IMG/VR virus record: IMGVR_UViG_3300005613_000001
Coordinates: 372,001 to 436,000 of that record
Direction: 5' to 3' (one strand)
Length of the DNA stretch: 64,000 bases
In this document: one piece after another, positions 4,123 through 53,178 of the stretch
How the letters are laid out: each line of letters opens with the position of its first letter
Numbering within the stretch: position 1 is the stretch's first letter
Notes under the pieces: generated by a model
The model's database searches: none
Seen by the model: the letters and a program-made list of their open reading frames with translations, nothing else
Told to the model about the DNA's origin: nothing
Made by a program: the position numbers and the translations under genes

Positions 4123-5652
4123 CTATTTATGAAGTGTGAAGTAAAATTTCGCACCTTCTCCCTCTTTTGAAATAACCCAAATTTTGCCTTTATATTCTTC
4201 TACTATCTTTTTTACTAATGATAAACCTATTCCCGTACTTTCTGTAGAATCTTTAGGTTCTAGAGTCTGGAATATCTGAAATATCTTATCATGATACTTA
4301 GATTCTATCCCAGGACCATTATCCGAAACACAAAATTCAACACAATCCCCGACATCTCTATTAGATATTTCAATTTTAATATTATCGGGATCATTATGAT
4401 GTTTTACAGCATTATTTATTAAATTAGAAAAAAGCTGTATCATCCTAGTGGGATTAGCCTCAATAAACTTCACTTCGAAACTTTTTTCTGTAACTGTTTC
4501 TAATGAGACTTCTACTTCCTTTATTACTCTCTGGATGTTTAATTTCTCTTTATTTACTTCCATACGGCCAATGCGAGAGAATTCAAGCAAGCCATTAATT
4601 AGAGATTCCATTCTTTTCACTCTTTGTTGTAAAAGCTCAACATGATCTGTAACATCTAGATTTTCTTTTAAGTCCTCCGCAATCCAAGATGATAAATTAA
4701 ACACTGCCCTCAAAGGAGCTTTCAAATCGTGAGATGCCACATAAGCGAATTGACTAAGTTCGGCATTAGAAGCAAGCAATTCATCTGTCCGCTGCGCAAC
4801 GCGAATTTCTAGAGAATCATTTGCCTCTTTCAATTGTTCATTTTGAATATAAATTTGATCTTTATTCTCTTTCAGGGAATGCATCATTTGCACCACGGAA
4901 TGAAATATGCCGGTAGTTTCTTTTTCTACTGCAACATTCAAATCGCCTGTTGCAATTCTTTCTGTTAATGATGCAATTTCTGAAGGTTCGCCACCTACCT
5001 GTGTTAAAACATTGCGAGTAATAAAGATAGTCAAAACTATCCCTGCCAAACAAGCAATGACGGTACTCACAATTAAAAAAATAACAGCATGTCTTGCTGT
5101 TGTTGTCGCTTCTTGCTGACGGGTTTCCAACAACCCCTTTTCCACATTGATAAATTCTTGTATGTGAAGTCGTATGTTGCCCATCTTGCCTTTGCCAATA
5201 GGAAGCATTGCAATGATTTCAGGATGTATTGGGCCTTCAAGATCTGTTATGCGAAGTTTAATTTCTTCTTTAGCTACGGAGTCCAGCCAATCCTGAACTA
5301 ATTTATCAATTTCTCTCACCTTTTCAATTTGAGATGGATTATCTGAAACGTGGTTATTCAAATGGGTTTGCATTTCCGCATATTCTTTTTGCCCACGCTC
5401 ATAGGGCTCTAGAAATTCCCGTGTGCCCGTAATAATGAAACCCCGCAATCCTGTTTCCATGTCAATAATTGATCCTTCAATAGCATGTGCATCGCCTATC
5501 ACTTCATTTGTGTGAATTACCCATTCTTCCGTTTCAATAATTGATGAAATGCTAAAGTGGCTCACAAGCGAAGTGGCAACCATAATCGCTAAAATAACAG
5601 CATAACCAAAAATTAATTTGGTGCGTAATGGGGCATCATTTTTCCAGTTCAC
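4123..5652 (-). CDS. membrane sensor histidine kinase (CHASE3-HisKA-HATPase)
   Basis: two TM segments, DMETGLRGF..FLEPY (CHASE3), ASHDLKAP H-box, N/G1/F/G2 boxes. Confidence 0.95.
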   Translation of the reverse strand: MNWKNDAPLRTKLIFGYAVILAIMVATSLVSHFSISSIIETEEWVIHTNEVIGDAHAIEGSIIDMETGLRGFIITGTREFLEPYERGQKEYAEMQTHLNNHVSDNPSQIEKVREIDKLVQDWLDSVAKEEIKLRITDLEGPIHPEIIAMLPIGKGKMGNIRLHIQEFINVEKGLLETRQQEATTTARHAVIFLIVSTVIACLAGIVLTIFITRNVLTQVGGEPSEIASLTERIATGDLNVAVEKETTGIFHSVVQMMHSLKENKDQIYIQNEQLKEANDSLEIRVAQRTDELLASNAELSQFAYVASHDLKAPLRAVFNLSSWIAEDLKENLDVTDHVELLQQRVKRMESLINGLLEFSRIGRMEVNKEKLNIQRVIKEVEVSLETVTEKSFEVKFIEANPTRMIQLFSNLINNAVKHHNDPDNIKIEISNRDVGDCVEFCVSDNGPGIESKYHDKIFQIFQTLEPKDSTESTGIGLSLVKKIVEEYKGKIWVISKEGEGAKFYFTLHK

Positions 5653-29904: not shown

Positions 29905-30084
29905 ATGAAAATTTCAGTAATAGTAACAGATCAGGGCAACGGGGGAGCTTATTGTCCGAATTGCCATAAATGTCTTGATAATGGAGATCCCCGCATCAAG
30001 TTCCCCTCAAAGTGCCCCAAATGTGAAGTTGAATTTACAGGTGTTGATGAACCCTGGCTCAGCCCAGGTGGGAGTGATTTTTAA
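29905..30084 (+). CDS. small Zn-ribbon protein
   Basis: hand-translated; CPNC..CPKC; AAGGAG RBS. Confidence 0.6.
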   Translation: MKISVIVTDQGNGGAYCPNCHKCLDNGDPRIKFPSKCPKCEVEFTGVDEPWLSPGGSDF

Positions 30085-30086
30085 AC

Positions 30087-30119
30087 AAAAAAGGCCCCTT
30101 TCTAACGAAAGGGGCCTTT
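30087..30119. terminator. bidirectional terminator closing the cas locus
   Basis: AAAAAAGGCCCCTTTC TAAC GAAAGGGGCCTTT. Confidence 0.88.
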
Positions 30120-30164
30120 CCCAAGGGCTTCGAGTCATTGTCCAATCTTATGTGACGACACCCC

Positions 30165-30199
30165 GTTTCGACCCACACGGTCAGATAAATTCTGCCATG
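30165..30199 (-). CRISPR. solitary degenerate repeat overlapping the cas3 stop
   Basis: hairpin CATGG-CAGA/TCTG-A-CCGTG followed by TGGGTCGAAAC (repeat handle is TGGGTTGAAAC). Confidence 0.55.
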
Positions 30200-32388
30200 T
30201 AACCTAGAAAGTTAGGATCATAGGCACCCTTCCAAATGTAAAATCCATCTTCATTTTTTACAACAGGACACTTATCTTTCTTTTTCTCATATATCTGAAC
30301 GCTGTTTCTTGTAATCTCGTTTCGTGAAAGTGGATCATTCTTTAGAACGCTAGGATCAATAACTGCTGCAAATTTCAATGCGTTAATAACACGAAAATAC
30401 TCACCCACAGTTCTTAATTTCCCAGCATTCTCAGCCCGAACCAATTCTTCAATTGTGTACCCTTTGTCGTCGGGCTCTCTTTTTATCTTCTTTTCTTTTT
30501 CTGTTTCTAGTTGTAATTTGGCCGCTGCATCACACATTTCCGGGCCATAAGTCCCCTTTTTGTAAAAATCTCTGAATATCTTCGCAGGAATTTGGAATTC
30601 AGGATTTTCTGTAAATGGGTTGAAAGGATTAAAATTATCTTCATCTTGCTGTTCAAGTTCAAATATCTGAATAAAAGAATCTCTATAAAGACCTTCCCTG
30701 TTAATCCTTCCTTTGCACTGATGAGCATTATCTAGCCCTGCAATTTCTCTAAATCCATAACGGAATGAGAAATCAATTCCACACTCTACGCAAGATGTGG
30801 CTACAAGAATCCAATCATCATTCGGGCGATTTTTTAATTTCTTTATCACTCTATCCAATATTGCTTGTCTATCTTTGGGAGTAAGACAAGTTGATAGGTG
30901 TTCGACCTCTTTGCCTTGTTCATATAATGTTTTGGCAACTATAGCTGCATTTTTGATTGTATTAAATACAGCTAATTTTGGACCTTGAGGCTTAGAAATC
31001 ATTCTGCAAACACTTTGCAACGTATGCTTCCAAGGAGAATACCTTATTTCCACTCTCCCATTCTCTCTCTCAAGTGTTTTTTTGCTCAATTTAGGAGGAA
31101 TGATAGAGGGAACTTCAAAATCAAAACCACTTAATTCCTTAAAATAAGCATCCTCCCAAGGTCTAATTAGTGAACCTGAAGAAAAGAGCACTTTGCACCC
31201 TAGATTTTCAACAAGATATTTAAGCGACTTTAGTGCTAAAGGCCAAAAAATCAGAGGTATTGAAATGTGGGATTCATCAATAATGATAAAAGATCCTGCG
31301 AAGTTATGCAGTTTCCTTAATTTTCTTGTCCTACAAGCCAATAAAGATTCAAAAAACTGTACTGCTGTTGTGCAAACAATGGGACAGCTACATGTTGTTG
31401 CTAGAGCTTTTGCCCGAATACCCCTTCCTACGTCCTCATCATCTTCTACTTGATGATGATATTCGCCTACTGTTTCTGGTCCCTCATTTGGAAGTAACAA
31501 TTTGCGATATGTGTTCACACTTTGTGATATAATAGAGCAAAATGGAGCCACATAAATTATTTTCCTTGGATTCTGTTTAAGGGCATAAGCCATTAAAGCC
31601 GTAGTTTTCCCTGTTCCCACTTCGCTAGGACAACAAACAACGGGAGCCTCAACAGGAGAATTTCTACAAGCCCCATATACCGATGCCCTTATTCTATTTC
31701 TATCGTTATTTTCACTTTCTTTTTGCAAATTGTGAATGTAAGTATCTAATATTTTAAGTCGTTTCTCGGCATCTAGTTCTAACTCCGATTCAATTACAAA
31801 ATTGCCATAATGTTGGGCTGTATCATGCCAATCTGCGTCTACCAAGCATGATAAAGCAATTCTCATTAAATTGGGTGAAAGTTTATTGGGCGAATCTCCT
31901 TGTATGTCTTTTATTGTCTTGCTATGCTTTTCAACTAGCGATGGCAACATTTCATCAAAATAATCGCAAACCATACCATCATAATCAACCCAAGGGGTTC
32001 TATCTCTAACTAAATTCTCATCTCTATAATCCACACCTGTTGGTGAGTAATCACAATAACCTCTATGGTGCGACACTACCATCCATGCTGCTGGTAAATG
32101 TTTTTCGGAGATAAGATGGGCCGTGCCCGCATCAACATGATTGGGCATCTTGCCATTTTTTTCTCCCCTTAGCACTATTTGGTTGTGTTTTCCAAGTTTG
32201 CCCAAATCATGCCATCTCGCGGCTTTTAAGACAATTAATGACAATGCCTCAAAGTCACTTTTGTTTAAATGCGGGCGTATTTTCTCTAAATTATATTCAC
32301 ATTTACGACAAACCCCTTCAATGTGAGAGGGGTATGTTTGAACCGGAATCCCACGCTCTATGTCTGCTGAATGTGCTAGGTATTCCAT
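30181..32388 (-). CDS. cas3: Cas3 HD nuclease-helicase
   Basis: AHS, WHDLGK, SHH, LVDADW; GTGKTT, IIDESH, GIDFS, Q..GRINREG. Confidence 0.95.
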   Translation of the reverse strand: MEYLAHSADIERGIPVQTYPSHIEGVCRKCEYNLEKIRPHLNKSDFEALSLIVLKAARWHDLGKLGKHNQIVLRGEKNGKMPNHVDAGTAHLISEKHLPAAWMVVSHHRGYCDYSPTGVDYRDENLVRDRTPWVDYDGMVCDYFDEMLPSLVEKHSKTIKDIQGDSPNKLSPNLMRIALSCLVDADWHDTAQHYGNFVIESELELDAEKRLKILDTYIHNLQKESENNDRNRIRASVYGACRNSPVEAPVVCCPSEVGTGKTTALMAYALKQNPRKIIYVAPFCSIISQSVNTYRKLLLPNEGPETVGEYHHQVEDDEDVGRGIRAKALATTCSCPIVCTTAVQFFESLLACRTRKLRKLHNFAGSFIIIDESHISIPLIFWPLALKSLKYLVENLGCKVLFSSGSLIRPWEDAYFKELSGFDFEVPSIIPPKLSKKTLERENGRVEIRYSPWKHTLQSVCRMISKPQGPKLAVFNTIKNAAIVAKTLYEQGKEVEHLSTCLTPKDRQAILDRVIKKLKNRPNDDWILVATSCVECGIDFSFRYGFREIAGLDNAHQCKGRINREGLYRDSFIQIFELEQQDEDNFNPFNPFTENPEFQIPAKIFRDFYKKGTYGPEMCDAAAKLQLETEKEKKIKREPDDKGYTIEELVRAENAGKLRTVGEYFRVINALKFAAVIDPSVLKNDPLSRNEITRNSVQIYEKKKDKCPVVKNEDGFYIWKGAYDPNFLGYMAEFI

Positions 32389-32406
32389 TTTTTGTCCACG
32401 TATAAT

Positions 32407-33587
32407 ATTTCAACCCACGCCATATCAAATGACGAACGCCTCTTGTTATTATCCGCCGCCTCCTCGCCAGTTTCAACCCACGCCATATTAAATGACGAAC
32501 TTGAGCAGGGAAGTGGCTTCCTTTGGTGAATGTTTCAACCCACGCCATATTAAATGACGACTTTCCCGTAGCACGCCGAAAGGATAGTATGGGTTTCAAC
32601 CCACGCCATATTAAATGACGACTTCTCCTGTTTCGGTTTCCTTGGCATTCCGCAGTTTCAACCCACGCCATATCAAATGACGATTGTAAGTAAGCTCCCG
32701 CGAATTATTCTCATCGTTTCAACCCACGCCATATCAATGACGATTGTTAGACGCAATCATTTTGTCGGTGAGTAGCCGCCGTTCGTCGTTTCAACCCACG
32801 CCATATCAAATGACGATTGTTACGTCGCAGAAAGCCTAACGGGATGTGGCTAACGTGTTTCAACCCACGCCATATCAAATGACGATTGTTAGACCCTCAT
32901 TCACGGGAGACTCTATAGTGCATCGTTTCAACCCACGCCATATCAAATGACGATTGTAAGTTGGAATAGATGCAGTCGCAGTCGTCGTTTCAACCCACGC
33001 CAAATGACGGTCGCTTATGTCCTGCTGGGTGTATCCACAATTGTTTCAACCCACGCCATATCAAATGACGATTGTTAGGTAAATGCTACTGGACAGGACG
33101 GATCTATGTCTATGACGGGTTTCAACCCACGCCAAATGACGATTGTTAGTCGGCAGCAATTTCCACCGCCTCCCATTTTGAGTTTCCGTTTCAACCCACG
33201 CCATATCAAATGACGATTGTTAGTACGGGGAATACACCACTTGTGTAGGTGTAAGCGTCGTTTCAACCCACGCCATATCAAATGACGATTGTTAGGATCG
33301 TATGAACAGGGACAAGAGCCAATCCCGCCTCGTTTCAACCCACGCCATATCAAATGACGATTGTTAGCCCCTCTAGCGTCTTTTACTTTGTGCTTTTGTC
33401 CGGTCAGTTTCAACCCACGCCATATCAAATGACGATTGTTAGCCGCCTCAAATACGCATCATTCAAGCCAGAGGTAACAGTTTCAACCCACGCCATATCA
33501 AATGACGATTGTTAGAAAATCTAATGCAAGCTCGCCACCACTCCCAAACGTGTTTCAACCCACGCCATATCAAATGACGATTGTTAG
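32407..33587 (-). CRISPR. type I-C CRISPR array, 18 repeats / 17 spacers
   Basis: consensus CTAACAATCGTCATTTGATATGGCGTGGGTTGAAAC (36 nt), stem CGTCAT/ATGGCG plus 11-nt tail; degenerates toward cas3. Confidence 0.98.
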
Positions 33588-33752
33588 GGCTTATGATTTA
33601 AGTCCTTAACACTAAAAGACTTATGAAGGTGTTTTCGAGAGGTATCAAAAACCACTTTCATTTTTGAGCTTCTTTTTAATTGTTTATCAATTTGCATCAC
33701 CGTAAGTGGTTCTCATTGAGCCACTTACGGTGATGCGAGTGGTGCGGGAGGT
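33588..33752 (-). promoter_or_regulatory. CRISPR leader
   Basis: adjacent to the best-conserved repeats; two TAAGT-N15-ACTTA inverted repeats; 16-bp perfect stem at 33694-33736. Confidence 0.8.
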
Positions 33753-34643
33753 TTATTTAGCACGGAACCCTTCGAATTGGTTCAAATCCTCCACTGGGAA
33801 ATCAAAATCTGGTTGTGAGAACGTGTAATCCTCCAAGGAGTGAGATGCCATAGTAGGATCATCCCCTATCCTCACGGGAGTTAAAGATTCCCAGAATTTT
33901 CGTTCATCAAAACTGCCCAGTGGATTTGTGTGGTCAGCCCACCAAGTATGAAGGACATTCAGTGACCCAGGCGGGCGAGAAGTTGATGTGGAGGATGTAA
34001 AGATGTGCTTCAAAACATGTTTGAATACTTCTACGTCCTCTTGCGTAGTAAAGGTCCGCGTGGCAAGATTCGGATTAACCGAAATTCTTGATACATACAC
34101 TCCATGTGTAATGTATTTCTTGGCTCGGGGAGCCAAATCCGATTCTTCTTGCCGCAATGGGAACCTCTTAGACAATGTGCCGCCATCAAGTTTATTTACT
34201 TTTGCCACCGAAATGGCATTTGATAGCACAACAGGCCCAGTAGCAATAAAGTCAAATTCCTTTTCTTCTTTCTTGCCTTGGATTGCTGTTGTTCCGAATA
34301 GTCTAACATCCCAATACCAATTACAAAAGGCTTCAATGTCCTCACTCAGTTTGGAAGCTAATTTTTTGGCTTCAACACCATCTGAAGCATCTTTAAACCC
34401 TCGCAGCATAGATTCAAAGACATGAAATCTATCGGGATTAATTTCCAATCTTTCTTGCAAATACTGAAAGACCGGCGATTTATGATCTACAAATAAATCC
34501 CGCAGTTTTCTTTTCAGAGAACAATCACTGGCCCAACCATAACCATCAGAGGTTACTCGGGGTTCCCCTTCCCAATCGGGATCGCCATTGGGGTTTCCAA
34601 GGTTACATTCAAAGACGAGCAGACCTGAACTTCTTTTAATCAT
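33753..34643 (-). CDS. cas7: Cas7 (Csd2), type I-C
   Basis: GNPNGDPD...PR, SLKRKLRD, WDVRLFG, TGPV. Confidence 0.95.
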   Translation of the reverse strand: MIKRSSGLLVFECNLGNPNGDPDWEGEPRVTSDGYGWASDCSLKRKLRDLFVDHKSPVFQYLQERLEINPDRFHVFESMLRGFKDASDGVEAKKLASKLSEDIEAFCNWYWDVRLFGTTAIQGKKEEKEFDFIATGPVVLSNAISVAKVNKLDGGTLSKRFPLRQEESDLAPRAKKYITHGVYVSRISVNPNLATRTFTTQEDVEVFKHVLKHIFTSSTSTSRPPGSLNVLHTWWADHTNPLGSFDERKFWESLTPVRIGDDPTMASHSLEDYTFSQPDFDFPVEDLNQFEGFRAK

Positions 34644-34644
34644 G

Positions 34645-35031
34645 TTACTCTCCGTTTTCTTGGGGTTTTCTGTATGAGTATCCGGCTGCTAAAAGCAATG
34701 ATGCTTGGTGTGACAAGCTAGTAGGAAGTTGCCCGTGGGCCGCTTCTGTCATTCTTGACAATAACTCTTCATAGATTCTTACTGAGAAGTAGCAATTATC
34801 ACTTTCCTTTCTTTTGTAGTTTTTCGCCCAATCCAAATACACATTAAAATTTCTTACGAAACTATCCATTCCGCTATCTGGATTGGATCGAATTCCATAA
34901 AGGCTTTTTCCGCCAATCAATGTGGAGGGCACACTTGCCCCACGGCACATGAAAAACGCTCGGTGTATAGCACTCGCCTCTGTAAGAAGCCTCCCTAAAA
35001 GAAATGCCCAATGATTTTCGTAATCTTCCAT
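34645..35031 (-). CDS. cas11: Cas11 small subunit from internal in-frame start within cas8c
   Basis: AAGAAAGG-N7-ATG before MEDYENHWAFLLGRLL; 128 aa; internal translation is established for I-C. Confidence 0.65.
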   Translation of the reverse strand: MEDYENHWAFLLGRLLTEASAIHRAFFMCRGASVPSTLIGGKSLYGIRSNPDSGMDSFVRNFNVYLDWAKNYKRKESDNCYFSVRIYEELLSRMTEAAHGQLPTSLSHQASLLLAAGYSYRKPQENGE

Positions 35032-36453
35032 TTTCAAGCCTTTCTTGTACAAGATTAAATGACCTAGAGGTAAAAGATGCCTTAATAAGTAAGGCGCGTT
35101 TTTGTAATTACATCTAAAGACCATAGGAGCTACATGGGTTGCATAGTGTCTTTCAAATTTAGCAATTGCAGCCGGTTCATTAAAGAACAAATCATGCGCA
35201 TCCCAAATGTTGAAGCCATAAGATTTAACACTTGTAAATTTATCCTCTGCTCCATTGTAATTCCAAGTGCAATTACAAGCATCTACTACATTTCGGAGAT
35301 TTGGGTAGGCAACCTGGAAAATACTTCTGCCGTTTTGTATTCCGGCTTTCCATTCATTGACCCCATTTAATATCTCTTCTGAAGTGGCTGATTTAGAATA
35401 AACAACCCTTCCCACTTTCTTCTGTCCCACTAATTCTAAAACGACAATCCGGCCTACAACATCTCGTTTCTTTTGTTCCCTCATCATTTTTATAAGAGAT
35501 GCTGCCGATTCTTGCCAATCTTCTAAGGTAACCTCACTTTTTGATTCTAATGTTGTTTGATTAGGGAGTATGCTGCTCAGCACCCAATGGGATTTCATCA
35601 CTTTGCCATCTATATTTGTAACGGAGACGCTGTACCAAAGCCCTCCAACTTCCCTTTTATTTTTCTTATCATAATAAGCTTGATGCTCTGGAGATAGAAT
35701 GAAGTCAATCGCCCTTTCGATTTTCCTTCGAGAAGTAATTCCCAAAACGCAGCTTTGAGTGGAATTTAATCCAAAACGCTCAAAACATTGGTTTTTTTCA
35801 AATTTTGAAAAATATTGAATTTGAATATTGCCGGGCTTAACTTCAAAACCCTTTTTATCACTTCCGAAATTAGAATTGCCTAGAATATCTTTTTTCTCAT
35901 CATCTGCTTGCGGACTTTCTAATTGCCCATCTTCTAATTCAAATAATCGTTGACTAATCTTGCGAAGACAAGTAAAGCTTTGAACAGGGCACGGATAGTC
36001 AGAAGGTTTATCTACTTCTAACGCCACATGGAGAGGCTTGTCTTGGTAATATTCTGATAGTTGTTCTATGAAAGCATTTACATCAATCTTTTCTAAATGC
36101 TCTGCCAATTGTTTAAGTGCTAACAATTCCTCTGAACCATCAAAAACTTCTTTGCTGATTTCTATTGTTGTTTGTATTCTTGCTTTAATTCTCTCTAGCT
36201 TTTTCTCCTCATCTTCATCTTTCTTAGGACCAAAAGACAGCCCTATTGCTTTGTTGCTTTTTTTGTAGAATCTAAGATTTCGCCAAGCGTCAAAATCATT
36301 AATTTCTACAATTCCCTTTGGGCCAATGCGAACTTCAATGGCCTTTTGATTGGGATTGGATTTTAATTCACGGTGCCACTGTTCTCCGTCCTGCTCGGGC
36401 GAGATGCCCCAAGATTCTAAACTATCACAAAAAGAGAGCAATTCGTTCAACAT
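34645..36453 (-). CDS. cas8c: Cas8c large subunit (divergent)
   Basis: position between cas5 and cas7; MLNEL start, WHRELK, C-terminal AFLLGRLL..GY. Confidence 0.8.
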   Translation of the reverse strand: MLNELLSFCDSLESWGISPEQDGEQWHRELKSNPNQKAIEVRIGPKGIVEINDFDAWRNLRFYKKSNKAIGLSFGPKKDEDEEKKLERIKARIQTTIEISKEVFDGSEELLALKQLAEHLEKIDVNAFIEQLSEYYQDKPLHVALEVDKPSDYPCPVQSFTCLRKISQRLFELEDGQLESPQADDEKKDILGNSNFGSDKKGFEVKPGNIQIQYFSKFEKNQCFERFGLNSTQSCVLGITSRRKIERAIDFILSPEHQAYYDKKNKREVGGLWYSVSVTNIDGKVMKSHWVLSSILPNQTTLESKSEVTLEDWQESAASLIKMMREQKKRDVVGRIVVLELVGQKKVGRVVYSKSATSEEILNGVNEWKAGIQNGRSIFQVAYPNLRNVVDACNCTWNYNGAEDKFTSVKSYGFNIWDAHDLFFNEPAAIAKFERHYATHVAPMVFRCNYKNAPYLLRHLLPLGHLILYKKGLKMEDYENHWAFLLGRLLTEASAIHRAFFMCRGASVPSTLIGGKSLYGIRSNPDSGMDSFVRNFNVYLDWAKNYKRKESDNCYFSVRIYEELLSRMTEAAHGQLPTSLSHQASLLLAAGYSYRKPQENGE

Positions 36454-37154
36454 AGCTTACTCCATTCAACGTCAAGTTTTTGTTGAATTTTCTGATCCTG
36501 AAAAACTAAAATACCATCCCTCAAGGTCACTTCTTGATCTGTTAATCTTAAAACACCCGCCTCAATTTTTACATTTCTAGCTGTCACCACATCAACGCAT
36601 CCACCGGGTTTATCATCATCAAAGACAGACATAACCATAGTGGGAACATCAAAAGAGCAATCATTGATTTTGGTAATTGGTTTCCCCAAATATGTTGCCA
36701 TAAATTCTTTTCTACCCAAGGAAACAGGGTGGTAGGATTGTCCCCGCTTCAATCTTCTAAAGAATTGATTTTGGAAGGAATGGGCGCAATTAACATTTTG
36801 ATATTTGGCGGGGGATGGTTTGGAGTTTGTATTAAGTGCTAGAGCTAGAATTTGGAATCGCGGCCTAAGCAATACGGATTCATGGAGTTGTAAAGCATTG
36901 TCTTTTTCTATTTGATCTTTGAGGCGGAATGGGCTACGCGAATTATACGTATAGTGCGTATATTGAGGTTTTGCACATACTCCAATTGCTACTATTTCTA
37001 GTTTGACCCCCTTTATTCTACAGCATGATTCAATCATGCCTATACAAGCGGAAGGAGGAGGGAGGGGATAGCTAGCACTTTCACTACCTGTACACGGATC
37101 AGCAAACATCCCGAAGTCGCCAGCGATTTCAAAGCCGATAGGATAAGCAATCAT
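36447..37154 (-). CDS. cas5: Cas5 (Cas5d, crRNA-processing)
   Basis: FEIAGDFGMF.DP..SYP.PPPSA..GMIES, SLGRKEF. Confidence 0.92.
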   Translation of the reverse strand: MIAYPIGFEIAGDFGMFADPCTGSESASYPLPPPSACIGMIESCCRIKGVKLEIVAIGVCAKPQYTHYTYNSRSPFRLKDQIEKDNALQLHESVLLRPRFQILALALNTNSKPSPAKYQNVNCAHSFQNQFFRRLKRGQSYHPVSLGRKEFMATYLGKPITKINDCSFDVPTMVMSVFDDDKPGGCVDVVTARNVKIEAGVLRLTDQEVTLRDGILVFQDQKIQQKLDVEWSKLC

Positions 37155-37181
37155 CTTAAGTTCCTTTTATCCATTGAAAGT

Positions 37182-37415
37182 GTTTCAACCCACGTCATGT
37201 TAATGACGAATCCGCATGCTGCCGTCTGCCACTCGCATGACCTTCTTTCTTTCAACCCACGCCATACTAATGGCGATTGTTAATCTGAGCGACGATTGCT
37301 TGTAAGCCACAGCGCATGAGTTTCAATCCACGCCATATCAAATGACGATTGTTAGTCGCATATCACCCCTGTTGGTGGAGCCGCTGTTTTAACCCACGCC
37401 ATATCAAATGACGAT
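37182..37415 (-). CRISPR. mini-array, 4 divergent repeats / 3 spacers, upstream of cas5
   Basis: repeats at 37182, 37249, 37320, 37386; stems retained through stem-preserving substitutions. Confidence 0.92.
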
Positions 37416-37489
37416 CCACAGTACATTCATCGGCAAAATGACGACGATTGTGACCTACCACGTACAATTCCTTTTCCCCGTATTTTCCC

Positions 37490-37517
37490 ATAATAGCATA
37501 GGTCCATTGAAAGTAAA
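37490..37517 (-). promoter_or_regulatory. predicted promoter of mini-array/cas operon
   Basis: TTTACT-N16-(TG)TATTAT, same architecture as the promoters at 7280-7307 and 38912-38939. Confidence 0.65.
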
Positions 37518-37547
37518 GAGGAATTCTAGTACCAAAATCGGGGGGTT

Positions 37548-38483
37548 CTAATCCACCCACGATCTTGAATCTGGATGCGGAATATAGTTATCTGGCGTTT
37601 TGATTTTTCTACGACCATCATAAATTGGGATCTGATTAGCATAATCATACCATCCAAAAACTGGTTCGTCTTCTGCGCGAGCAAACAATAAATCACCCGA
37701 ACCCGCTTTAACATGATTGTTCATGAAGCTTCGTAGTTCTCCCGCCTCAATAACTTGATCTTGATTGGGGTCAATATCTGGGCTTTCTTCTGCGATTGCC
37801 ACTAATACTTTTTTCATAGGGTCAATTTGATCGCCCCAATAACTCACCTTATTTGCGGGAGAGCTTGCAATCATAGTAAAGAGTTTTTGCTGGTTTTCAG
37901 GCATGCTAGAGATTTCTGGAAGGCCGGAAGCTGCGTAACAAGCGGATTGCCACCATAATGTTTCTTGTTTGCATTCGCCCGCTGCCTCAGCAAAAATTCT
38001 ACCTATGACATCTCTCTTGCCAAATTCAGCCATAGAACCGCTTCGGCTGCCGTGACCACAGGTGTAAATGAAAAGCGTATCTCCTGATACGGCATCTGTT
38101 TTCATTTGTTCAATTAAAAATTCTTTCAAATTAGAAAGGGAAATCTTTTTACCTGACCAAACTACTCGATTGATTCTTGGACCCTCTCCATTAACAAGAT
38201 GCGCTCCAATGTCTTTGATTCTAAGACCTTTTGAGGCTGCTATGTTTGCTACCTCTAACGCTTGACCAGCATTTTTGTTTGCAATAGATTCTGTACAGTG
38301 TTTCAAAACCAAAAATCTAACAGATGTGCGACTGTTTAGTTCGACACTACCAATAAAGTGTTCTTCAACAGCCGGTGCTTGAACATAAAGAGGCGGACTT
38401 TCTTTTGTTTGGTTGCACTTAGAAAGGATTACACATCCCAAAATTAAAGCAGCTACAACTGTAAGTAACAATCGTGCTTTCAT
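37548..38483 (-). CDS. exported caspase-fold (clan CD) peptidase-like protein
   Basis: GDTLFIYTCGHG and QSACYA His/Cys dyad; signal peptide. Confidence 0.75.
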   Translation of the reverse strand: MKARLLLTVVAALILGCVILSKCNQTKESPPLYVQAPAVEEHFIGSVELNSRTSVRFLVLKHCTESIANKNAGQALEVANIAASKGLRIKDIGAHLVNGEGPRINRVVWSGKKISLSNLKEFLIEQMKTDAVSGDTLFIYTCGHGSRSGSMAEFGKRDVIGRIFAEAAGECKQETLWWQSACYAASGLPEISSMPENQQKLFTMIASSPANKVSYWGDQIDPMKKVLVAIAEESPDIDPNQDQVIEAGELRSFMNNHVKAGSGDLLFARAEDEPVFGWYDYANQIPIYDGRRKIKTPDNYIPHPDSRSWVD

Positions 38484-38531
38484 GATAACCTCCTTGATTG
38501 TTTTATGTTATCCTTACTCTTATATAGTGCC

Positions 38532-38828
38532 ATGAAAATCACTTTACAACAAGCAGTAGAATTAGGAATAATAACTCAAAAAGAAGCAGATGACGGTGGT
38601 GTTTATATTCCATCGCGCAAAGAGTTTTTTCCTTATAATAACATTTGGATTACAGAATATTTTTTACAAGATGTGCAAGCACGGCAAAGTATCGTTAATT
38701 CTGCTAGAGCAAGGGATATAACAGATCAAGATATTGATGATTGGCGAGAAGTGGGAAAACAATTAGATGCAATGGATTTCAAAGAAATCAGAAAGCGGGT
38801 TGTATTTGAGAGAGAAGATCATGGGTGA
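38532..38828 (+). CDS. hypothetical protein
   Basis: ORF after TATATA motif. Confidence 0.6.
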   Translation: MKITLQQAVELGIITQKEADDGGVYIPSRKEFFPYNNIWITEYFLQDVQARQSIVNSARARDITDQDIDDWREVGKQLDAMDFKEIRKRVVFEREDHG

Positions 38829-38911
38829 GGGGGCATCATTTGCCTCATTCTGGGGGAATAATCTTGCTCATAAGTTTTCGAAAACGATTTTGCTTTTTTT
38901 GCCCTGGACCC

Positions 38912-38939
38912 TTGACATCGCAATTCTGCATGCTATACT
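38912..38939 (+). promoter_or_regulatory. sigma70-like promoter
   Basis: TTGACA-N16-(TG)TATACT. Confidence 0.75.
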
Positions 38940-38996
38940 GAGAAATAGATGGCAACCCGCAAATGGAAATTGTACCCAGGGCCACTCTACTAGGGT

Positions 38997-39413
38997 ATGA
39001 TTTGTGAGGCTTGTGGAGAAAAATGCCAAGAAAAATGGTGTCTATCTTGTACTTTTGGGGGGTTCATACCCAAAGAAGTTGACTACTCGCCCTTCAAACC
39101 AATTCTATCGCGTGCAAAGCAACGGAAGAAAAAAATTGACCTGACGCTGAGCGATCTTTACAATCAATGGCAAAAACAAAAGGGGCGGTGTCCGTATACT
39201 GGTTGGAAACTAAAGCTGCCCGCTGGCCGGAATGAAAAACTGCCCAAAACCCCAGATCGCGCCAGCTTAGATCGTATTGATAGTTCAGGCGGTTACACAC
39301 CCGATAACATACAATATGTTTCTCTTGCTATTCAATACGCAAAACACAACTGGTCACAATTTGAAGTGAAGAAAATGCTTTTAGATGCAACAAAGCATCT
39401 GCATTTGATTTAG
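38997..39413 (+). CDS. HNH-like endonuclease
   Basis: Q.GRCPYTG, SLDRIDSSGGY..DNIQ. Confidence 0.8.
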   Translation: MICEACGEKCQEKWCLSCTFGGFIPKEVDYSPFKPILSRAKQRKKKIDLTLSDLYNQWQKQKGRCPYTGWKLKLPAGRNEKLPKTPDRASLDRIDSSGGYTPDNIQYVSLAIQYAKHNWSQFEVKKMLLDATKHLHLI

Positions 39414-50273: not shown

Positions 50274-51590
50274 TCAGTTACAAACAATAATACAAGAATA
50301 CCAAACACCATTTGATCCTTTTGCCATATCTGCGCCAAAGTAACGATGTTGTTTTGAAGCAACAGACCAATGACCTGGCGATTCTTTCCAACATTTAAAC
50401 ATTTCCCACCCTAAATCAAACATTGAATCATTTTCTTGTCGTTTCCATGATTCGGCACAAATCTCTGCTGTCTCTCTCCCTAAACCAGCATTCATAATCT
50501 CTTGAGAGCGTTTGTTGAAATTTTGATGTCCTTGTGTCCGAACTCTTGCTTGATATTCTGCGTGTTTTGTAGCTAATTCCATCAATAGTGGATGGGGTTC
50601 TGATTTACAAACATTAGCCCCCGGAAATTGCAGCCCCGCCTCTATAAGACCTTCTGATGTGTTGTGCAAGTCGGGCTTTGCATTATTTTCAAATGCTATT
50701 GGGGCCTCTTTCATAAAATATAACGCCGCCTCATAAGTTCTATTAAACTCATCTTTGATTTCATTATCTGAGGGGGGTCTTTGATGTGTGCCGAATTCAA
50801 TAATAATTCCAAATGCACCTTGTCTATCTGCCCAATTGGCATCTAGAGTTGGCCCAGCAGATCCACCTCTAGTTCTATAGCCTGACAAGTCGCCCATTTT
50901 CCCGCATATTCTTTTGTAGGCGTCTTTATTTGAAGGATATATAAATACCCTTCCATAAGAGTGCCCTGAGGCAAAGGCATCAAATTCCTGTTTTTTAAAG
51001 AAATCTCTTAAATTTTGAATAGGCGTTACTGACTTTTTGTTGTCATAAAAATTCCTATTGGGATCAACCCCGTCTACGCTTCTACTATTGGGGTAACTAT
51101 CGGGGGATATAACTGGAATAAACCACAGTTCTCTTGTATCTACAAGTTCTGTAATTTTTGCATCTTTCCCATAATTATCTAGAATAGTTCCAATCCACCC
51201 CAATACAGTGCAGGTAGAAATAGGCTCATTACCATGAATACAACCCGACATCAAAACTTTGGGTTTGTCACCTGTTTTCATCTCATTGGTAATGCGAATA
51301 TAAACTTGATCCTTATTTTTAGTTGTTTTCCCATAGGTTCCAATCTCAACTAAATCTTCCGCTTCTTTTTCCCACGCTTTTAATTGCTCCACTAATTGTG
51401 GATACTCCATAAAAGATGGGATAACAACCGAAATGTTGGGTTGTTGCGGCTCTTGAGGTTGAGTCAGTTCGGAAACTGCTCCCTCAAATTTCTTAAAGAG
51501 TTCTTCTACTGGTCTTTCTGTTGACGTGGAGTAGAAGAAGAGTGTAGATAGCACAAACAGTGCTATAAATAGAATAACCTTCTTGTCCAT
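50274..51590 (-). CDS. exported M14 zinc carboxypeptidase fused to CAP-like domain
   Basis: IHGNE, DPNRN, HSYG, IEFG; C-terminal H..F..R, EICAES, W..SPGH. Confidence 0.88.
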   Translation of the reverse strand: MDKKVILFIALFVLSTLFFYSTSTERPVEELFKKFEGAVSELTQPQEPQQPNISVVIPSFMEYPQLVEQLKAWEKEAEDLVEIGTYGKTTKNKDQVYIRITNEMKTGDKPKVLMSGCIHGNEPISTCTVLGWIGTILDNYGKDAKITELVDTRELWFIPVISPDSYPNSRSVDGVDPNRNFYDNKKSVTPIQNLRDFFKKQEFDAFASGHSYGRVFIYPSNKDAYKRICGKMGDLSGYRTRGGSAGPTLDANWADRQGAFGIIIEFGTHQRPPSDNEIKDEFNRTYEAALYFMKEAPIAFENNAKPDLHNTSEGLIEAGLQFPGANVCKSEPHPLLMELATKHAEYQARVRTQGHQNFNKRSQEIMNAGLGRETAEICAESWKRQENDSMFDLGWEMFKCWKESPGHWSVASKQHRYFGADMAKGSNGVWYSCIIVCN

Positions 51591-51702: not shown

Positions 51703-53178
51703 TTAGATCACGAAGTTTGCAATTGACAGACGGGCGTAGAACTTACTTCCTTCACGGAGCAACTTCTTACCGTAACGTGTCAAGATACCCTTCCTCGGGC
51801 AGAAGCTCTCGGGGTCCAACACAACCGGAGTTTGTGTCAGGGGCACGTATGGAAGGTAGAAGTAACCAGCGTCCATGTAGCTGTCACCCTTGTAACCCAT
51901 AAGGATCTGGCCTTGTGGGAACAGAGGATCTTTGTACAGACGCCAACGGCTATTCACCGTACCAACGTACTGGATACCTAGAGAACTTGTGAAAGTCTCG
52001 GAAGGTGCAGGAGCGAAACCAGCGGTAGCTGTTTCAAAGATAGAAGCAACTTCAGGAGAAGTAACAAGCCAGTTACATCCACCACGAAGAGTCTTTCTAT
52101 GAACAACGTTACTGACTTCTACGATCTTCACGTAGAGGCTTTCATAACGCTCTTTAATTGTGTCACCCAAAGCGGTATTGAAGTCCCAAGAAGCAACCGT
52201 ACCAGCGTTGTTACGAAGGTCAGTAAGAACTTCTCGGTCAATTTCCAAGTTAATTTCTTGGGCCAAAACGGCTGTCAATTCAGCTTCAGCGTCAAGGTTG
52301 TGCTGGCTACGAAGGTCTTGTTGAGCTTCATAGGACCAAACAGCCTTAAGCTTTCTTGTCTTGGCAGCGACTTCTTCGCTTTCCACGACTAAATTAATTT
52401 CGGGCAGATCAGGGTTGCATTCCATGTTATATTCATAGTTTGCGACAACAGAGTTGTCCCCAGGCCCGGCTCCCCCGCCACCAGTGTCAGACCACGCAAT
52501 TACTAGCTCACCTGTGGTGAGGTCTAGCGAACTACCGGCTGCTAGTGGGGTATAATCAGGAGCACCAATAGCATTAACGGTGAAAGTACCACTCTCATCG
52601 ATGGCATACGTAGCAACTGCTGTAGCACCATCATAAATCGTACCTGTCATCGTTCCTGCCAAAATTGGCGTGTGTTCAAGCGGAGCGAAAACACTTGTCA
52701 TATCTAAACCATCATCAGTGGAACTCGTCTCATTCTGGACGAACTGGTGAGAGTAGTAGATATCAAGGTTTGCATCACCACTTGCCAACTGTTGAAGTGA
52801 ATTCACATCGTCAGTTGGGTAGCCGCCATTATTATCAGCACCACGGGTTGCGCCCTTGTTGCTGCTGTAACGGAAGCGTAGGTAATAAACCAAACCAGTT
52901 GGGCCAAGCAATGGTTGTACGGATACAATCTTGTTAGCAATTAACTGGGGATAAATACGACGTACAAGCGGAATAGAAATACGCTTGAACTGGGCAATGT
53001 CGCCCGTGTCGGTTGAAGTCTCGTTGAAAAGCATTTGGTTTTCAAGCATAACGGCAGTGTTCTTGCGAATGAATTCATCATCCAGGTCGCCATCTACACT
53101 CTCAAGAAGACCAGTCTTTTCCCACTTGGCTTCACAAACTTTACTTTCATTCAAAAGTTTTGAATTACCACTAAACAT
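51703..53178 (-). CDS. T4-like major capsid protein gp23
   Basis: LENQ, LVRR..P.L.A..IVSVQP..GPTG, AKTRKLKA.W..E..QDL, EINLEIDRE, PYVPL, TRYG. Confidence 0.97.
   Translation of the reverse strand: MFSGNSKLLNESKVCEAKWEKTGLLESVDGDLDDEFIRKNTAVMLENQMLFNETSTDTGDIAQFKRISIPLVRRIYPQLIANKIVSVQPLLGPTGLVYYLRFRYSSNKGATRGADNNGGYPTDDVNSLQQLASGDANLDIYYSHQFVQNETSSTDDGLDMTSVFAPLEHTPILAGTMTGTIYDGATAVATYAIDESGTFTVNAIGAPDYTPLAAGSSLDLTTGELVIAWSDTGGGGAGPGDNSVVANYEYNMECNPDLPEINLVVESEEVAAKTRKLKAVWSYEAQQDLRSQHNLDAEAELTAVLAQEINLEIDREVLTDLRNNAGTVASWDFNTALGDTIKERYESLYVKIVEVSNVVHRKTLRGGCNWLVTSPEVASIFETATAGFAPAPSETFTSSLGIQYVGTVNSRWRLYKDPLFPQGQILMGYKGDSYMDAGYFYLPYVPLTQTPVVLDPESFCPRKGILTRYGKKLLREGSKFYARLSIANFVI

What the first reader, a model, noticed from the sequence alone, without database searches (positions are those of the whole stretch)
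37155..37517. cas5 5'UTR is a crRNA-like guide aimed at the cas operon's own promoter
Seen: directly after the last mini-array repeat (minus strand ...GTGGGTTGAAAC) comes ACTTTCAATGGA (37181-37170), then the cas5 SD and ATG. The same 12-mer occurs at 37514-37503, preceded by TTT and overlapping the -35 box of the predicted promoter; identity stops after position 12. Established: I-C Cascade uses a 5'-TTN PAM (TTC preferred), Cas5d leaves an 11-nt 5' handle, and crRNA-like RNAs with short PAM-proximal matches (CreA/CreR type) repress promoters without cleavage. Inference: autorepression. The unusual point is that the guide has no 3' repeat and is the head of the cas5-8-7 mRNA, so Cascade loading could also mask the cas5 RBS. 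That would be a two-layer feedback loop in a phage.
Basis: partly seen in the sequence, partly recalled or inferred. Interest (0 to 1): 0.88.

Follow-up and report, generated by a model that had tools for sequence, protein, structure and literature searches.

The report
Self-repressing guide in phage CRISPR operon
A huge phage carries its own type I-C CRISPR-Cas system, and the RNA just after the last repeat upstream of cas5 matches the first 12 bases of a site in the operon's own predicted promoter, so the system most likely switches itself off; four related phage systems show the same kind of guide-promoter pairing with different sequences.

Summary
ACTTTCAATGGA starts exactly at the first base after the last mini-array repeat (37181-37170, minus strand). 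It recurs only once in 64 kb, at 37514-37503. That copy is preceded by TTT and overlaps the -35 hexamer of the only promoter-like site in the intergenic region. Identity stops at base 12 and the flanks are unrelated.

The locus is a divergent type I-C system without cas1/2/4, inside a 527-kb phage contig. The order is promoter, 4-repeat mini-array, cas5-cas8c-cas7, 18-repeat array, HD-cas3.

The best 5'-anchored guide/target match falls in or beside the predicted cas5 promoter in the window and in four relatives with 40-45% Cas5 or Cas7 identity. The matched sequences are unrelated, mismatches sit at positions 6/12/18, and three of the five PAMs are TTY. Cognate pairs score 12-15; only 1 of 90 non-cognate pairs reaches 12.

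This fits CreR-type Cas autorepression, which is known for I-B, I-E, I-F1 and V-A. A published I-C Cascade structure shows a 12-bp partial R-loop that does not recruit Cas3.

New here are the phage-borne I-C setting and a guide that has no clear 3' repeat and is the head of the cas5 mRNA. RBS masking is geometrically possible but untested and not conserved. No RNA data were found.

The parts
37490..37517 (-). Predicted sigma-70-type promoter of the mini-array and cas5-cas8c-cas7 operon: TTTACT, 16 nt, TG-extended TATTAT. The TSS is inferred near 37483.
   Evidence: It is the only promoter-like site in the intergenic region. Relatives have TTTACA/TTGACA...TAGAAT/TATAAT promoters in the same place before cas5.
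37515..37517 (-). PAM-like TTT directly 5' of the target on the strand identical to the guide.
   Evidence: The I-C PAM is 5'-TTY in the Neisseria lactamica system (paper read). Clade targets carry TTC, TTC, CTT and TTA.
37503..37514 (-). Target (protospacer-like) 12-mer identical to guide bases 1-12. It overlaps the -35 hexamer and the promoter spacer.
   Evidence: It is the only other copy in 64 kb.
37182..37415 (-). Mini-array of four degenerate repeats (30-nt cores at 37415-37386, 37349-37320, 37278-37249, 37211-37182) with three spacers. The stems are kept by compensatory changes: CGTCAT/ATGGCG in the consensus, CGCCAT/ATGGCG in the third repeat, CGTCAT/ATGACG in the fourth.
   Evidence: The hairpin of the last repeat is predicted.
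37182..37192 (-). Predicted 11-nt 5' handle TGGGTTGAAAC of the last repeat, identical to the handle of the main array. Cas5c cleavage is expected between 37193 and 37192.
   Evidence: for the sequence. The cleavage site is inferred from established Cas5d biochemistry and was not tested.
37147..37181 (-). Guide-length stretch (35 nt) after the handle. Bases 1-12 (37181-37170) are the seed that matches the promoter. Bases 16-20 are the SD-like AAGGA (37166-37162), and bases 28-30 are the cas5 ATG (37154-37152).
   Evidence: The spacer length of about 35 nt comes from the main array.
36447..37154 (-). cas5c (235 aa), the presumed pre-crRNA endonuclease.
   Evidence: Pfam PF09704. PADLOC Cas5c 5e-13. 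A profile hits I-C Cas5 structures 8g9t and 8dex at 1e-12.
34645..36453 (-). cas8c (602 aa), the large subunit.
   Evidence: PADLOC Cas8c 3.5e-39.
33753..34643 (-). cas7 / Csd2 (296 aa).
   Evidence: PF05107 5e-40. TIGR02589 4e-36.
32407..33581 (-). Main CRISPR array, 18 repeats. The last repeat ends in GAAAT, 18 nt before the cas3 ATG.
30181..32388 (-). cas3 (735 aa) with an HD nuclease domain and a helicase domain.
   Evidence: TIGR01596 cas3_HD 7e-11; cas3_core 9e-21.

Best explanation
The window holds a phage-borne, adaptation-less type I-C CRISPR-Cas system. One promoter (about 37517-37490) transcribes a four-repeat mini-array and then cas5-cas8c-cas7. Cas5c is expected to cut each repeat at the 3' base of its hairpin. 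The cut in the last repeat would leave the 11-nt handle on the RNA that continues into cas5.

Cascade assembled on that handle would use the following bases as a guide. Its first 12 bases pair with the template strand at a TTT-flanked site that overlaps the -35 element of the same promoter. Twelve base pairs are enough for a stable PAM-proximal partial R-loop but not for the full R-loop that licenses Cas3. Cascade would therefore sit on the promoter and block RNA polymerase without cutting the phage genome.

The result would be negative autoregulation. Cas proteins, crRNAs and the guide are all made from the transcript they repress. Canonical crRNAs compete with the guide for Cas proteins, as in CreR circuits.

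Shown here: the sequence anatomy, the statistics, and equivalent guide/promoter pairs in relatives. Inferred: the TSS, Cas5c processing at the last repeat, Cascade loading on an RNA without a 3' hairpin, and repression.
For: (1) Exact anatomy. The match starts at guide base 1 and ends at base 12. It has a TTT PAM, a unique target in 64 kb, and overlaps the -35.
(2) The last repeat keeps a perfect 6-bp stem through a compensatory change and a handle identical to the main array's.
(3) Replication in relatives with unrelated sequences. In L004 a 15-nt match with a TTC PAM lies over the -10 box and spacer of TTTACA-17-TAGAAT. In L009 a 15-nt match with TTC lies 16 nt after the -10, across the cas5 SD. 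In L008 an 18-nt match with CTT ends 3 nt before the -35. In L143 a 14-nt match with TTA lies over the -10 TATAAT. In WIN, L004, L008 and L009 this is the single best anchored match anywhere in the 8-12.7 kb locus.
(4) Shuffle tests give 7, 2, 0 and 2 of 2000 for those four loci. In the cross-locus matrix, 5 of 10 cognate cells score at least 12 against 1 of 90 non-cognate cells. My hypergeometric calculation from those counts gives about 2e-5.
(5) In the relatives, every mismatch inside a matched stretch falls at guide position 6, 12 or 18, the bases a type I Cascade flips out. The scoring left only those positions free, so this follows partly from the method; what is informative is that 7 of the 10 free positions differ, close to the three in four expected for unconstrained bases. 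Shmakov et al. report the same for regulatory mini-arrays.
(6) Literature: CreR autorepression is shown for I-B, I-E and V-A and for I-F1. For I-C the PAM is TTY, a captured partial R-loop spans the PAM-proximal 12 bp, and Cas3 binds only the full R-loop.
(7) cas3 here has an HD nuclease domain, so a limited match is what a self-target would need.
Against: There are no transcript data: no TSS, no 5' end at 37192, and no Cascade-bound RNA. The promoter is only a 9-of-12 consensus match, and overall the 30000-39000 region holds no more such matches than shuffles do. For the window alone, 12 matched bases is at the edge of the empirical null (1 of 90 non-cognate pairs). It is also shorter than the relatives' 13-15. 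The closest relative with the same promoter, mini-array, cas5 layout (L007, 49% Cas5 identity) shows no such match, and four other loci show none. The PAM of this particular system is not known, and no protospacers were found. Whether this divergent Cas5 cleaves RNA is not known; Al-Shayeb et al. note altered active-site residues in huge-phage Cas5. Whether I-C Cascade assembles productively on a guide that continues into a 3.4-kb mRNA is untested.
Confidence: 0.68

Rival explanations
1. Coincidence. A 12-mer of ordinary AT-rich composition happens to recur 333 nt upstream, and the repeat simply ends where the cas5 leader begins.
For: One of 90 non-cognate guide-set/promoter pairs reaches 12 matched bases. 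Another main-array spacer has an anchored 12-nt match inside a coding region at 51394 with a non-PAM flank. L007, which has the same layout, has no match.
Against: The shuffle test gives 7 of 2000 even when all 23 guides and both strands are allowed. The hit also carries TTT and lands on the -35. Four relatives show the same relation with different sequences, and the matches are outliers within each locus.
Confidence: 0.1
2. The two 12-mers are a footprint of DNA rearrangement or a pair of protein operator sites. One version is short direct repeats flanking an inserted promoter-distal segment plus mini-array. The other is a repressor binding at the -35 and again at the cas5 RBS. Neither involves a Cascade guide.
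For: The two copies are direct repeats that bracket exactly the leader plus mini-array. The adjacent upstream gene (37548-38483) has no recognisable function and could encode a regulator.
Against: Neither version explains why the downstream copy begins at the first base after the handle. Neither explains the TTY flank of the upstream copy, or why relatives have equivalent matches between promoters and spacers several kb away inside arrays, with mismatches at positions 6/12/18. There is no flank similarity beyond the 12 nt.
Confidence: 0.08
3. The main role of the repeat in front of cas5 is post-transcriptional. Cas5c cleavage and/or Cascade or Cas7 assembly on the handle-bearing head of the message would control the stability or translation of cas5-8-7. 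The same would hold for cas3 behind the main array. The promoter match would be secondary or incidental.
For: Both cas5 and cas3 start within one guide length of a terminal repeat (ATG at guide bases 28-30 and 19-21). In L143 the cas3 ATG lies inside the last repeat. In L007 a repeat also directly precedes cas5.
Against: In L007 the SD and ATG lie beyond a 35-nt guide. In L008 cas3 starts 63 nt after the last repeat. Most relatives have no repeat before cas5. This reading does not explain the promoter match. It is compatible with the best explanation rather than exclusive of it.
Confidence: 0.12

Closest known systems
CreR (Cas-regulating RNA) autorepression circuits, Liu et al. 2023 (bioRxiv 10.1101/2023.03.10.532045)
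   Same: A degenerate CRISPR unit supplies a crRNA-like RNA. Its PAM-proximal bases (10-15 nt) match a PAM-flanked site in or next to the promoter of the effector cas genes, so the effector represses its own transcription without cleavage, and canonical crRNAs compete for it.
   Different: CreR was demonstrated for I-B, I-E and V-A in cellular hosts, and I-C cases were only listed from manual inspection. CreR genes are separate small-RNA units with psiR1-psiS-psiR2. Here the guide is the terminal unit of a mini-array, is co-transcribed with the genes it represses, has no clear psiR2, and continues into the cas5 coding sequence. The system is encoded by a phage.
Regulatory mini-arrays of Shmakov et al. 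2023 (PMC10120712)
   Same: They are mini-arrays in cas intergenic regions. Their spacers partly match cas promoters, with a cognate PAM and frequent mismatches at the sixth position. Single-repeat units without a recognisable distal repeat are noted.
   Different: Targets were reported for I-E, I-F1, I-D and I-B. I-C appears only in the count table (7% of loci have mini-arrays). Their phage cases are mini-arrays that copy host regulators to shut down host CRISPR, not regulators of a phage's own cas operon.
Single-repeat CreR/Cracr of type V-A, a psiR + psiS + rho-independent terminator (bioRxiv 10.1101/2024.10.29.618823)
   Same: A guide formed from one repeat and a spacer-like stretch without a second repeat, with a 10-nt promoter match. 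L009 in this clade has exactly this layout, ended by a 13-bp terminator.
   Different: That is class 2 (Cas12a processes its own guides and needs no 3' repeat). Here it is a class 1 Cascade. In the window the 3' end is not a terminator but the cas5 message.
CreTA (CreA/CreT) of Haloarcula hispanica I-B
   Same: A crRNA-like RNA with a limited seed match directs Cascade to repress a promoter. CreA also represses Pcas8.
   Different: No toxin partner is evident next to the mini-array in the window. The neighbouring ORFs have no family hits, and toxin function was not tested.
Huge-phage type I-C variant systems, Al-Shayeb et al. 2020 (PMC7162821)
   Same: Phage-encoded I-C-like cas5-cas8-cas7 loci without cas1/2/4, with compact arrays. 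The window comes from a 527-kb IMG/VR phage contig that encodes major head and portal proteins.
   Different: That paper describes variants with a helicase in place of Cas3 and does not describe self-regulating guides. Here cas3 has an HD domain.
I-C Cascade partial R-loop state, Hu et al. 2023 (bioRxiv 10.1101/2023.08.05.552134)
   Same: A structurally captured state in which only the PAM-proximal 12 bp are unwound and paired. The PAM is TTY, and Cas3 docks only on the full R-loop. The window's match is exactly 12 nt with TTT.
   Different: That is a transient intermediate on a fully matching target in Neisseria lactamica. Here the 12-bp state would be the end point, in a Cascade whose subunits are highly divergent from the characterised I-C proteins.

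Membership tests
CreR/CreA-type crRNA-like regulatory RNA | Repeat-like unit directly 5' of the spacer-like sequence that keeps the 5'-handle nucleotides | tested here: met
   The last mini-array repeat ends in TGGGTTGAAAC, identical to the main-array handle, and has a perfect 6-bp stem.
CreR/CreA-type crRNA-like regulatory RNA | Partial, PAM-proximal (seed-anchored) identity of about 10-15 nt to a site in or next to the effector cas promoter | tested here: met
   Twelve nt from guide base 1, over the -35 of the only predicted promoter. Shuffle test 7/2000.
CreR/CreA-type crRNA-like regulatory RNA | Cognate PAM next to the target | tested here: inconclusive
   TTT fits the TTY PAM published for a Neisseria I-C system, and 3 of 5 clade targets carry TTY. 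The PAM of this divergent system could not be derived, because no protospacers were found.
CreR/CreA-type crRNA-like regulatory RNA | Second degenerate repeat (psiR2) giving the 3' handle | tested here: inconclusive
   There is only a weak similarity to the 5' half of the repeat, in cas5 codons 5-11, at the canonical 42-nt register. It scores in the top 3% of random windows, has no hairpin, and lies in sequence constrained by the conserved Cas5 N-terminus.
CreR/CreA-type crRNA-like regulatory RNA | Stand-alone small-RNA gene separate from the cas mRNA | tested here: not met
   Only 27 nt separate the repeat from the cas5 ATG, with no promoter or terminator between them. The guide is the head of the message.
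CreR/CreA-type crRNA-like regulatory RNA | Guide and target co-vary among related systems | tested here: met
   Cognate guide/promoter pairs score 12-15 in 5 of 10 loci with unrelated sequences. Non-cognate pairs reach 12 in 1 of 90.
CreR/CreA-type crRNA-like regulatory RNA | Effector- and seed-dependent repression of the cas promoter | not testable with these tools
   This needs reporter assays. No RNA runs hold the locus.
Type I-C CRISPR-Cas | cas5c-cas8c-cas7 effector genes and an HD-helicase cas3 | tested here: met
   All scores are well below NCBIfam equivalog cut-offs, so this is a divergent branch.
Type I-C CRISPR-Cas | No cas6 gene (Cas5c takes the processing role) | not tested
   No ORF in the cas locus matched a Cas6 family among the proteins scanned. 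Not every ORF of the window was scanned.
Type I-C CRISPR-Cas | Repeat with a stem-loop and a 3' end ...ATTGAAAC that gives an 11-nt handle | tested here: met
   Repeats end in GTGGGTTGAAAC or GTGGATTGAAAC after a 6-bp stem. The cleavage itself was not tested.
Type I-C CRISPR-Cas | Adaptation module cas4-cas1-cas2 | tested here: not met
   None lies between or beside the cas genes and arrays. This matches huge-phage variants.
Solitary repeat units / RNA anti-CRISPRs (Racr) of viruses | Repeat mimic without cognate cas genes, acting on the host effector | tested here: not met
   The repeat belongs to an array next to cognate cas genes in the same phage, and the following sequence has a target in the phage's own promoter.

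The most novel reading that the evidence does not exclude
The 5' end of the cas5-cas8c-cas7 message is itself the guide. Cas5c cutting of the last repeat leaves the handle on the mRNA. Cascade then polymerises over the next ~35 nt, which include the SD and the ATG. One RNA molecule would thus be, in turn, a message, its own translational operator, and the RNA part of the complex that shuts the promoter it came from. The cas3 message behind the main array, whose ATG lies 18 nt after the terminal repeat, would be gated in the same way. That would be a Cascade-based feedback acting on both transcription and translation from a single cis-encoded element in a phage.
Probability: 0.22. Interest if true: 0.8.

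Novelty: new variant of a known kind. Interest (0 to 1): 0.62.

Why it matters
CRISPR effectors that repress their own promoters through degenerate guides (CreR) are a recent discovery, shown in a few cellular systems. This locus and its relatives suggest that the same logic governs CRISPR-Cas systems carried by huge phages. A phage would plausibly need a short pulse of nuclease-competent Cas expression that must never cut its own genome.

The locus offers a natural I-C example in which the match length (12 nt) equals the structurally defined partial R-loop. It also shows guide layouts that type I regulators were not known to use. One is a terminal guide without a 3' repeat, ended by a terminator in L009. 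Another is a 19-nt spacer in L008. In the window the guide is ended by the cas5 coding sequence.

If the mRNA-borne guide works, it is a compact design for self-limiting Cascade expression, and a test case for whether Cascade can assemble on the head of a long RNA.

Tried and rejected
(1) Close relatives for true covariation. Searches with Cas5 found nothing above 49% identity except the same phage; L006 is identical over 9.4 kb. Nucleotide-level covariation therefore could not be tested, and I used analogous pairs in distant relatives instead.

(2) RNA evidence. The first run search listed none. The second listed three marine-sediment DNA runs, whose contigs laid on the region were only short pieces under 90% identity and so unrelated.

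(3) Protospacers to derive the PAM. blastn of both arrays against 50,697 phage records gave no match. megablast of the locus also gave none.

The exact repeat in IMG/VR hits only this phage.

(5) A reverse search, from cas5 upstream regions to anywhere in the locus, in L002, L003, L010, L012, L015, L016, L017 and L018. The background of 12-13 matched bases in AT-rich loci is too high, and no hit starts at a repeat end.

(6) L007, which has the same layout as the window, has no guide/promoter match.

(7) Extra contigs (L015, L190-L196) lack arrays or are cut, so they were uninformative for guides.

(8) Rfam has no family in 30000-38600.

(9) Folding of the whole leader is no more stable than shuffles, z = 0.

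(10) MAFFT aligned the promoter region with the 5' half of the last repeat (10 of 14 identical). I judged this chance-level given the number of possible offsets.

(11) The terminal guide of the main array has an 11-of-12 match at 37468-37457. It has a seed mismatch at position 4 and a GGA flank, so I rejected it as a probable chance match (my reading).

Full report
WHAT IS THERE.
The window is part of IMGVR_UViG_3300005613_000001, a 527-kb viral contig. It encodes a major head protein (51703-53178) and a portal protein (57339-59912).

On the minus strand between 37560 and 30100 lies a CRISPR-Cas locus with these parts:
- A promoter-like site, TTTACT-16-TG-TATTAT, at 37517-37490.
- A mini-array of four degenerate repeats whose 3' ends are at 37386, 37320, 37249 and 37182.
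- cas5 at 37154-36447, cas8c at 36453-34645 and cas7 at 34643-33753.
- An 18-repeat main array at 33581-32407.
- cas3 at 32388-30181, followed by a partial repeat and a terminator-like hairpin.

Family assignments are Cas5c (PADLOC 5e-13; a profile hits I-C Cas5 structures at 1e-12), Cas8c (3.5e-39), Cas7/Csd2 (5e-40) and Cas3 with HD and helicase parts. No cas1, cas2 or cas4 is present. The locus is therefore a divergent, adaptation-less type I-C system of the kind noted in huge phages by Al-Shayeb et al. 2020.

THE OBSERVATION.
It is correct to the base. ACTTTCAATGGA occupies 37181-37170, immediately after the handle TGGGTTGAAAC of the last repeat. It occurs again at 37514-37503 behind TTT. 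The pattern has no third copy in 64 kb, even with position 6 free. Base 13 differs, and the flanks are unrelated in register.

TTT plus ACT form the -35 hexamer of the only promoter-like site in the intergenic region. That promoter call is only a consensus match. However, relatives have strong TTTACA or TTGACA promoters with TAGAAT or TATAAT -10 boxes in the same place before cas5.

The last repeat looks functional. Its stem is a perfect CGTCAT/ATGACG, a compensatory variant of the consensus CGTCAT/ATGGCG, and its handle is unchanged. The third repeat has another compensatory variant, CGCCAT/ATGGCG.

IS IT MORE THAN CHANCE?
I took all 23 sequences that follow a repeat in the locus. I asked for the best match anchored at base 1, with every sixth base free, in the 415 nt upstream of cas5 on both strands. 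The observed best is 12, and 7 of 2000 composition-preserving shuffles reach it. Across the whole 12-kb locus the promoter hit is the single outlier (12, against a background maximum of 9).

Across the whole window, one other spacer has an anchored 12-mer match, inside a coding region with a non-PAM flank. A 12-mer match somewhere in the window is therefore not remarkable. What is unlikely is the place, the strand logic and the PAM.

RELATIVES.
Cas5 homologues are at most 49% identical. I fetched their loci and applied the same anchored test.
- L004: a spacer inside the degenerate array downstream of cas7 matches 15 nt, with TTC in front, on the opposite strand across the spacer and -10 box of TTTACA-17-TAGAAT, 53 nt before cas5.
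- L009: the sequence after the very last repeat matches 15 nt with TTC, 16 nt after the -10 of TTGACA-16-TAGAAT, across the cas5 SD. This guide has no second repeat and runs into a 13-bp terminator.
- L008: a 19-nt spacer matches 18 nt behind CTT, ending 3 nt before the -35.
- L143 (identical to L144): a spacer matches 14 nt behind TTA over the -10 TATAAT of TTGACT-17-TATAAT. An equally long match inside cas8 weakens this case.

Shuffle tests give 2, 2 and 0 of 2000 for L004, L009 and L008. The matched sequences are unrelated between loci. In a 10 x 10 matrix of guide sets against upstream regions, five cognate cells score 12-15. Of 90 non-cognate cells, one reaches 12 and none reaches 13. My hypergeometric calculation from these counts gives about 2e-5.

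The mismatches inside the matched stretches are at guide positions 6, 12 and 18 (L008: all three; L009: 6 and 12; L004: 12; L143: 6). The scoring left only those positions free, so this placement follows partly from the method. Still, 7 of the 10 free positions differ, close to the three in four expected for unconstrained bases, and these are the bases a type I Cascade does not read. Shmakov et al. report the same for regulatory mini-arrays.

Five loci (L002, L003, L007, L011, L012) show nothing. Among them is L007, the only other locus with a promoter, mini-array, cas5 layout.

MECHANISM.
Three published findings bear on it. CreR RNAs guide I-B, I-E and V-A effectors to their own promoters through 10-15 nt of PAM-proximal identity, and an I-F1 mini-array does the same. 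For I-C, the Neisseria lactamica Cascade reads a 5'-TTY PAM. It has a captured partial R-loop state in which exactly the PAM-proximal 12 bp are unwound and paired, and it binds Cas3 only after the full R-loop forms.

The window's TTT plus 12 nt fits that intermediate. The most likely working is therefore that Cascade carrying the terminal guide parks on the -35 region and blocks initiation without licensing the HD-Cas3 encoded next door.

Guide, crRNAs and Cas proteins come from the same transcript, so the loop is a single-transcript negative autoregulator. The steps from TSS through processing, loading and repression are inferred, not shown.

THE UNUSUAL PART.
The guide is not a separate small RNA. 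Only 27 nt separate the repeat from the cas5 ATG, and there is no promoter or terminator between them. A guide length of 35 nt, as in the main array, would cover AAGGA (bases 16-20) and the ATG (bases 28-30). RBS occlusion is thus sterically plausible, but nothing tests it.

It is also not a clade feature. In the relatives the regulatory guides sit in arrays after cas7, and in L007 the SD and ATG lie beyond base 35.

A search for a hidden second repeat found only a weak similarity to the 5' half of the repeat in cas5 codons 5-11. It sits at the canonical 42-nt register and scores in the top 3% of random windows. It has no hairpin and lies in sequence fixed by the conserved Cas5 N-terminus. I leave this open.

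A terminal guide without a 3' repeat does have a precedent inside the clade (L009) and in V-A CreR/Cracr elements.

COMPARISON AND NOVELTY.
Functionally this is a CreR-type circuit. As a family member it meets the handle, seed-match, promoter-target and covariation criteria. It is inconclusive on the PAM and on psiR2, and it fails the criterion of a stand-alone small-RNA gene.

The following items are not in the papers I could read. They are autoregulatory guides in CRISPR-Cas systems encoded by phages themselves, I-C targets worked out with PAM and register, and a guide fused to the message it regulates. Liu et al. list I-C only from manual inspection. Shmakov et al. give I-C only in a count table. 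The phage crlRNA paper concerns phages silencing host systems. I rate it a new variant of a known kind.

LIMITS.
All evidence is from sequence. No sequencing run holding the locus was found, no protospacers were found, and no close relatives exist for nucleotide covariation. The window's own match is the shortest of the five and is statistically the weakest when taken alone.

Noticed in passing
window 32388-32418 (-): The cas3 ATG (32388) lies 18 nt after the last main-array repeat, which ends in GAAAT instead of GAAAC. After Cas5 processing, the cas3 message would also begin with a crRNA handle, and its start codon would be guide bases 19-21.
   Followed up: partly
L143 10480-10520 (IMGVR_UViG_3300014205_000198): In this relative the cas3 ORF starts at an ATG inside the loop of the last array repeat. 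Cleavage at the repeat would then remove the start codon from the message.
   Followed up: no
window 30165-30176 (-) and 30095-30113 (-): A partial repeat (GTGGGTCGAAAC, without the hairpin half) sits 4 nt after the cas3 stop. A terminator-like hairpin follows it.
   Followed up: no
window 37172-37188 (-): The handle bases GUUGAAA can pair with guide bases 3-9 (UUUCAAU) in a 7-bp hairpin. The L008 regulatory guide can form a similar 6-bp hairpin with its own handle. This might lower the guide's affinity for Cas proteins relative to normal crRNAs, or it might be chance.
   Followed up: partly
window 37119-37139 (-): cas5 codons 5-11 resemble the 5' half of the repeat at exactly the canonical 42-nt spacing from the previous handle (p about 0.03). 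This could be a decayed second repeat or a by-product of the conserved Cas5 N-terminus.
   Followed up: partly
window 37457-37468 (-): The sequence after the last main-array repeat (ATTATACGTGGA) matches 10 of 12 bases, or 10 of the 11 that Cascade reads, just downstream of the predicted cas promoter. It has a mismatch at seed position 4 and a GGA flank, so it is probably chance.
   Followed up: partly
window 32987-33140 (-) and 32407-32670 (-): The main array is irregular. Two repeats lack four bases of the hairpin loop (the ATAT of the consensus TTTGATATGG, leaving TTTGG), several spacers are short, and three of the last four repeats carry a TTTAATATGG loop variant. The array may be decaying or recombined, as expected without cas1/2.
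   Followed up: no
window 37216-37243 (-): The third mini-array spacer contains GCATGC twice in an imperfect palindrome. The leader fold pairs these, so the spacer may form its own hairpin.
   Followed up: no
L143 6097-6136 and 4757-4796: Two solitary repeat units lie on the opposite strand upstream of cas5. The one ending at 4796 is followed directly by a perfect TTGACA-17-TATAAT. No targets were found in the locus.
   Followed up: partly
L190 3975-4060; L017 1000-1050; L016 7780-7930: Handle-like sequences lie between the predicted -10 box and the cas5 start in L190 (GTGTTGTTGGAAAT) and L017 (GTTGAGAT). L016 has a duplicated cas5 promoter with a GTGGATTG-containing stretch between the copies. 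The arrays are missing or cut on these contigs, so the repeats could not be compared.
   Followed up: no
window 51394-51405 (+): A main-array spacer (the guide starting at 33042) has an anchored 12-nt match inside a coding region near the head genes, with an ACT flank. I judged it chance, and it serves as a reminder of the background rate.
   Followed up: yes
window 37548-38483 (-): The 311-aa ORF ending 31 nt before the cas promoter has no hit in Pfam, NCBIfam, PHROGs or PADLOC. There is no terminator between it and the promoter, so read-through into the mini-array is possible.
   Followed up: partly
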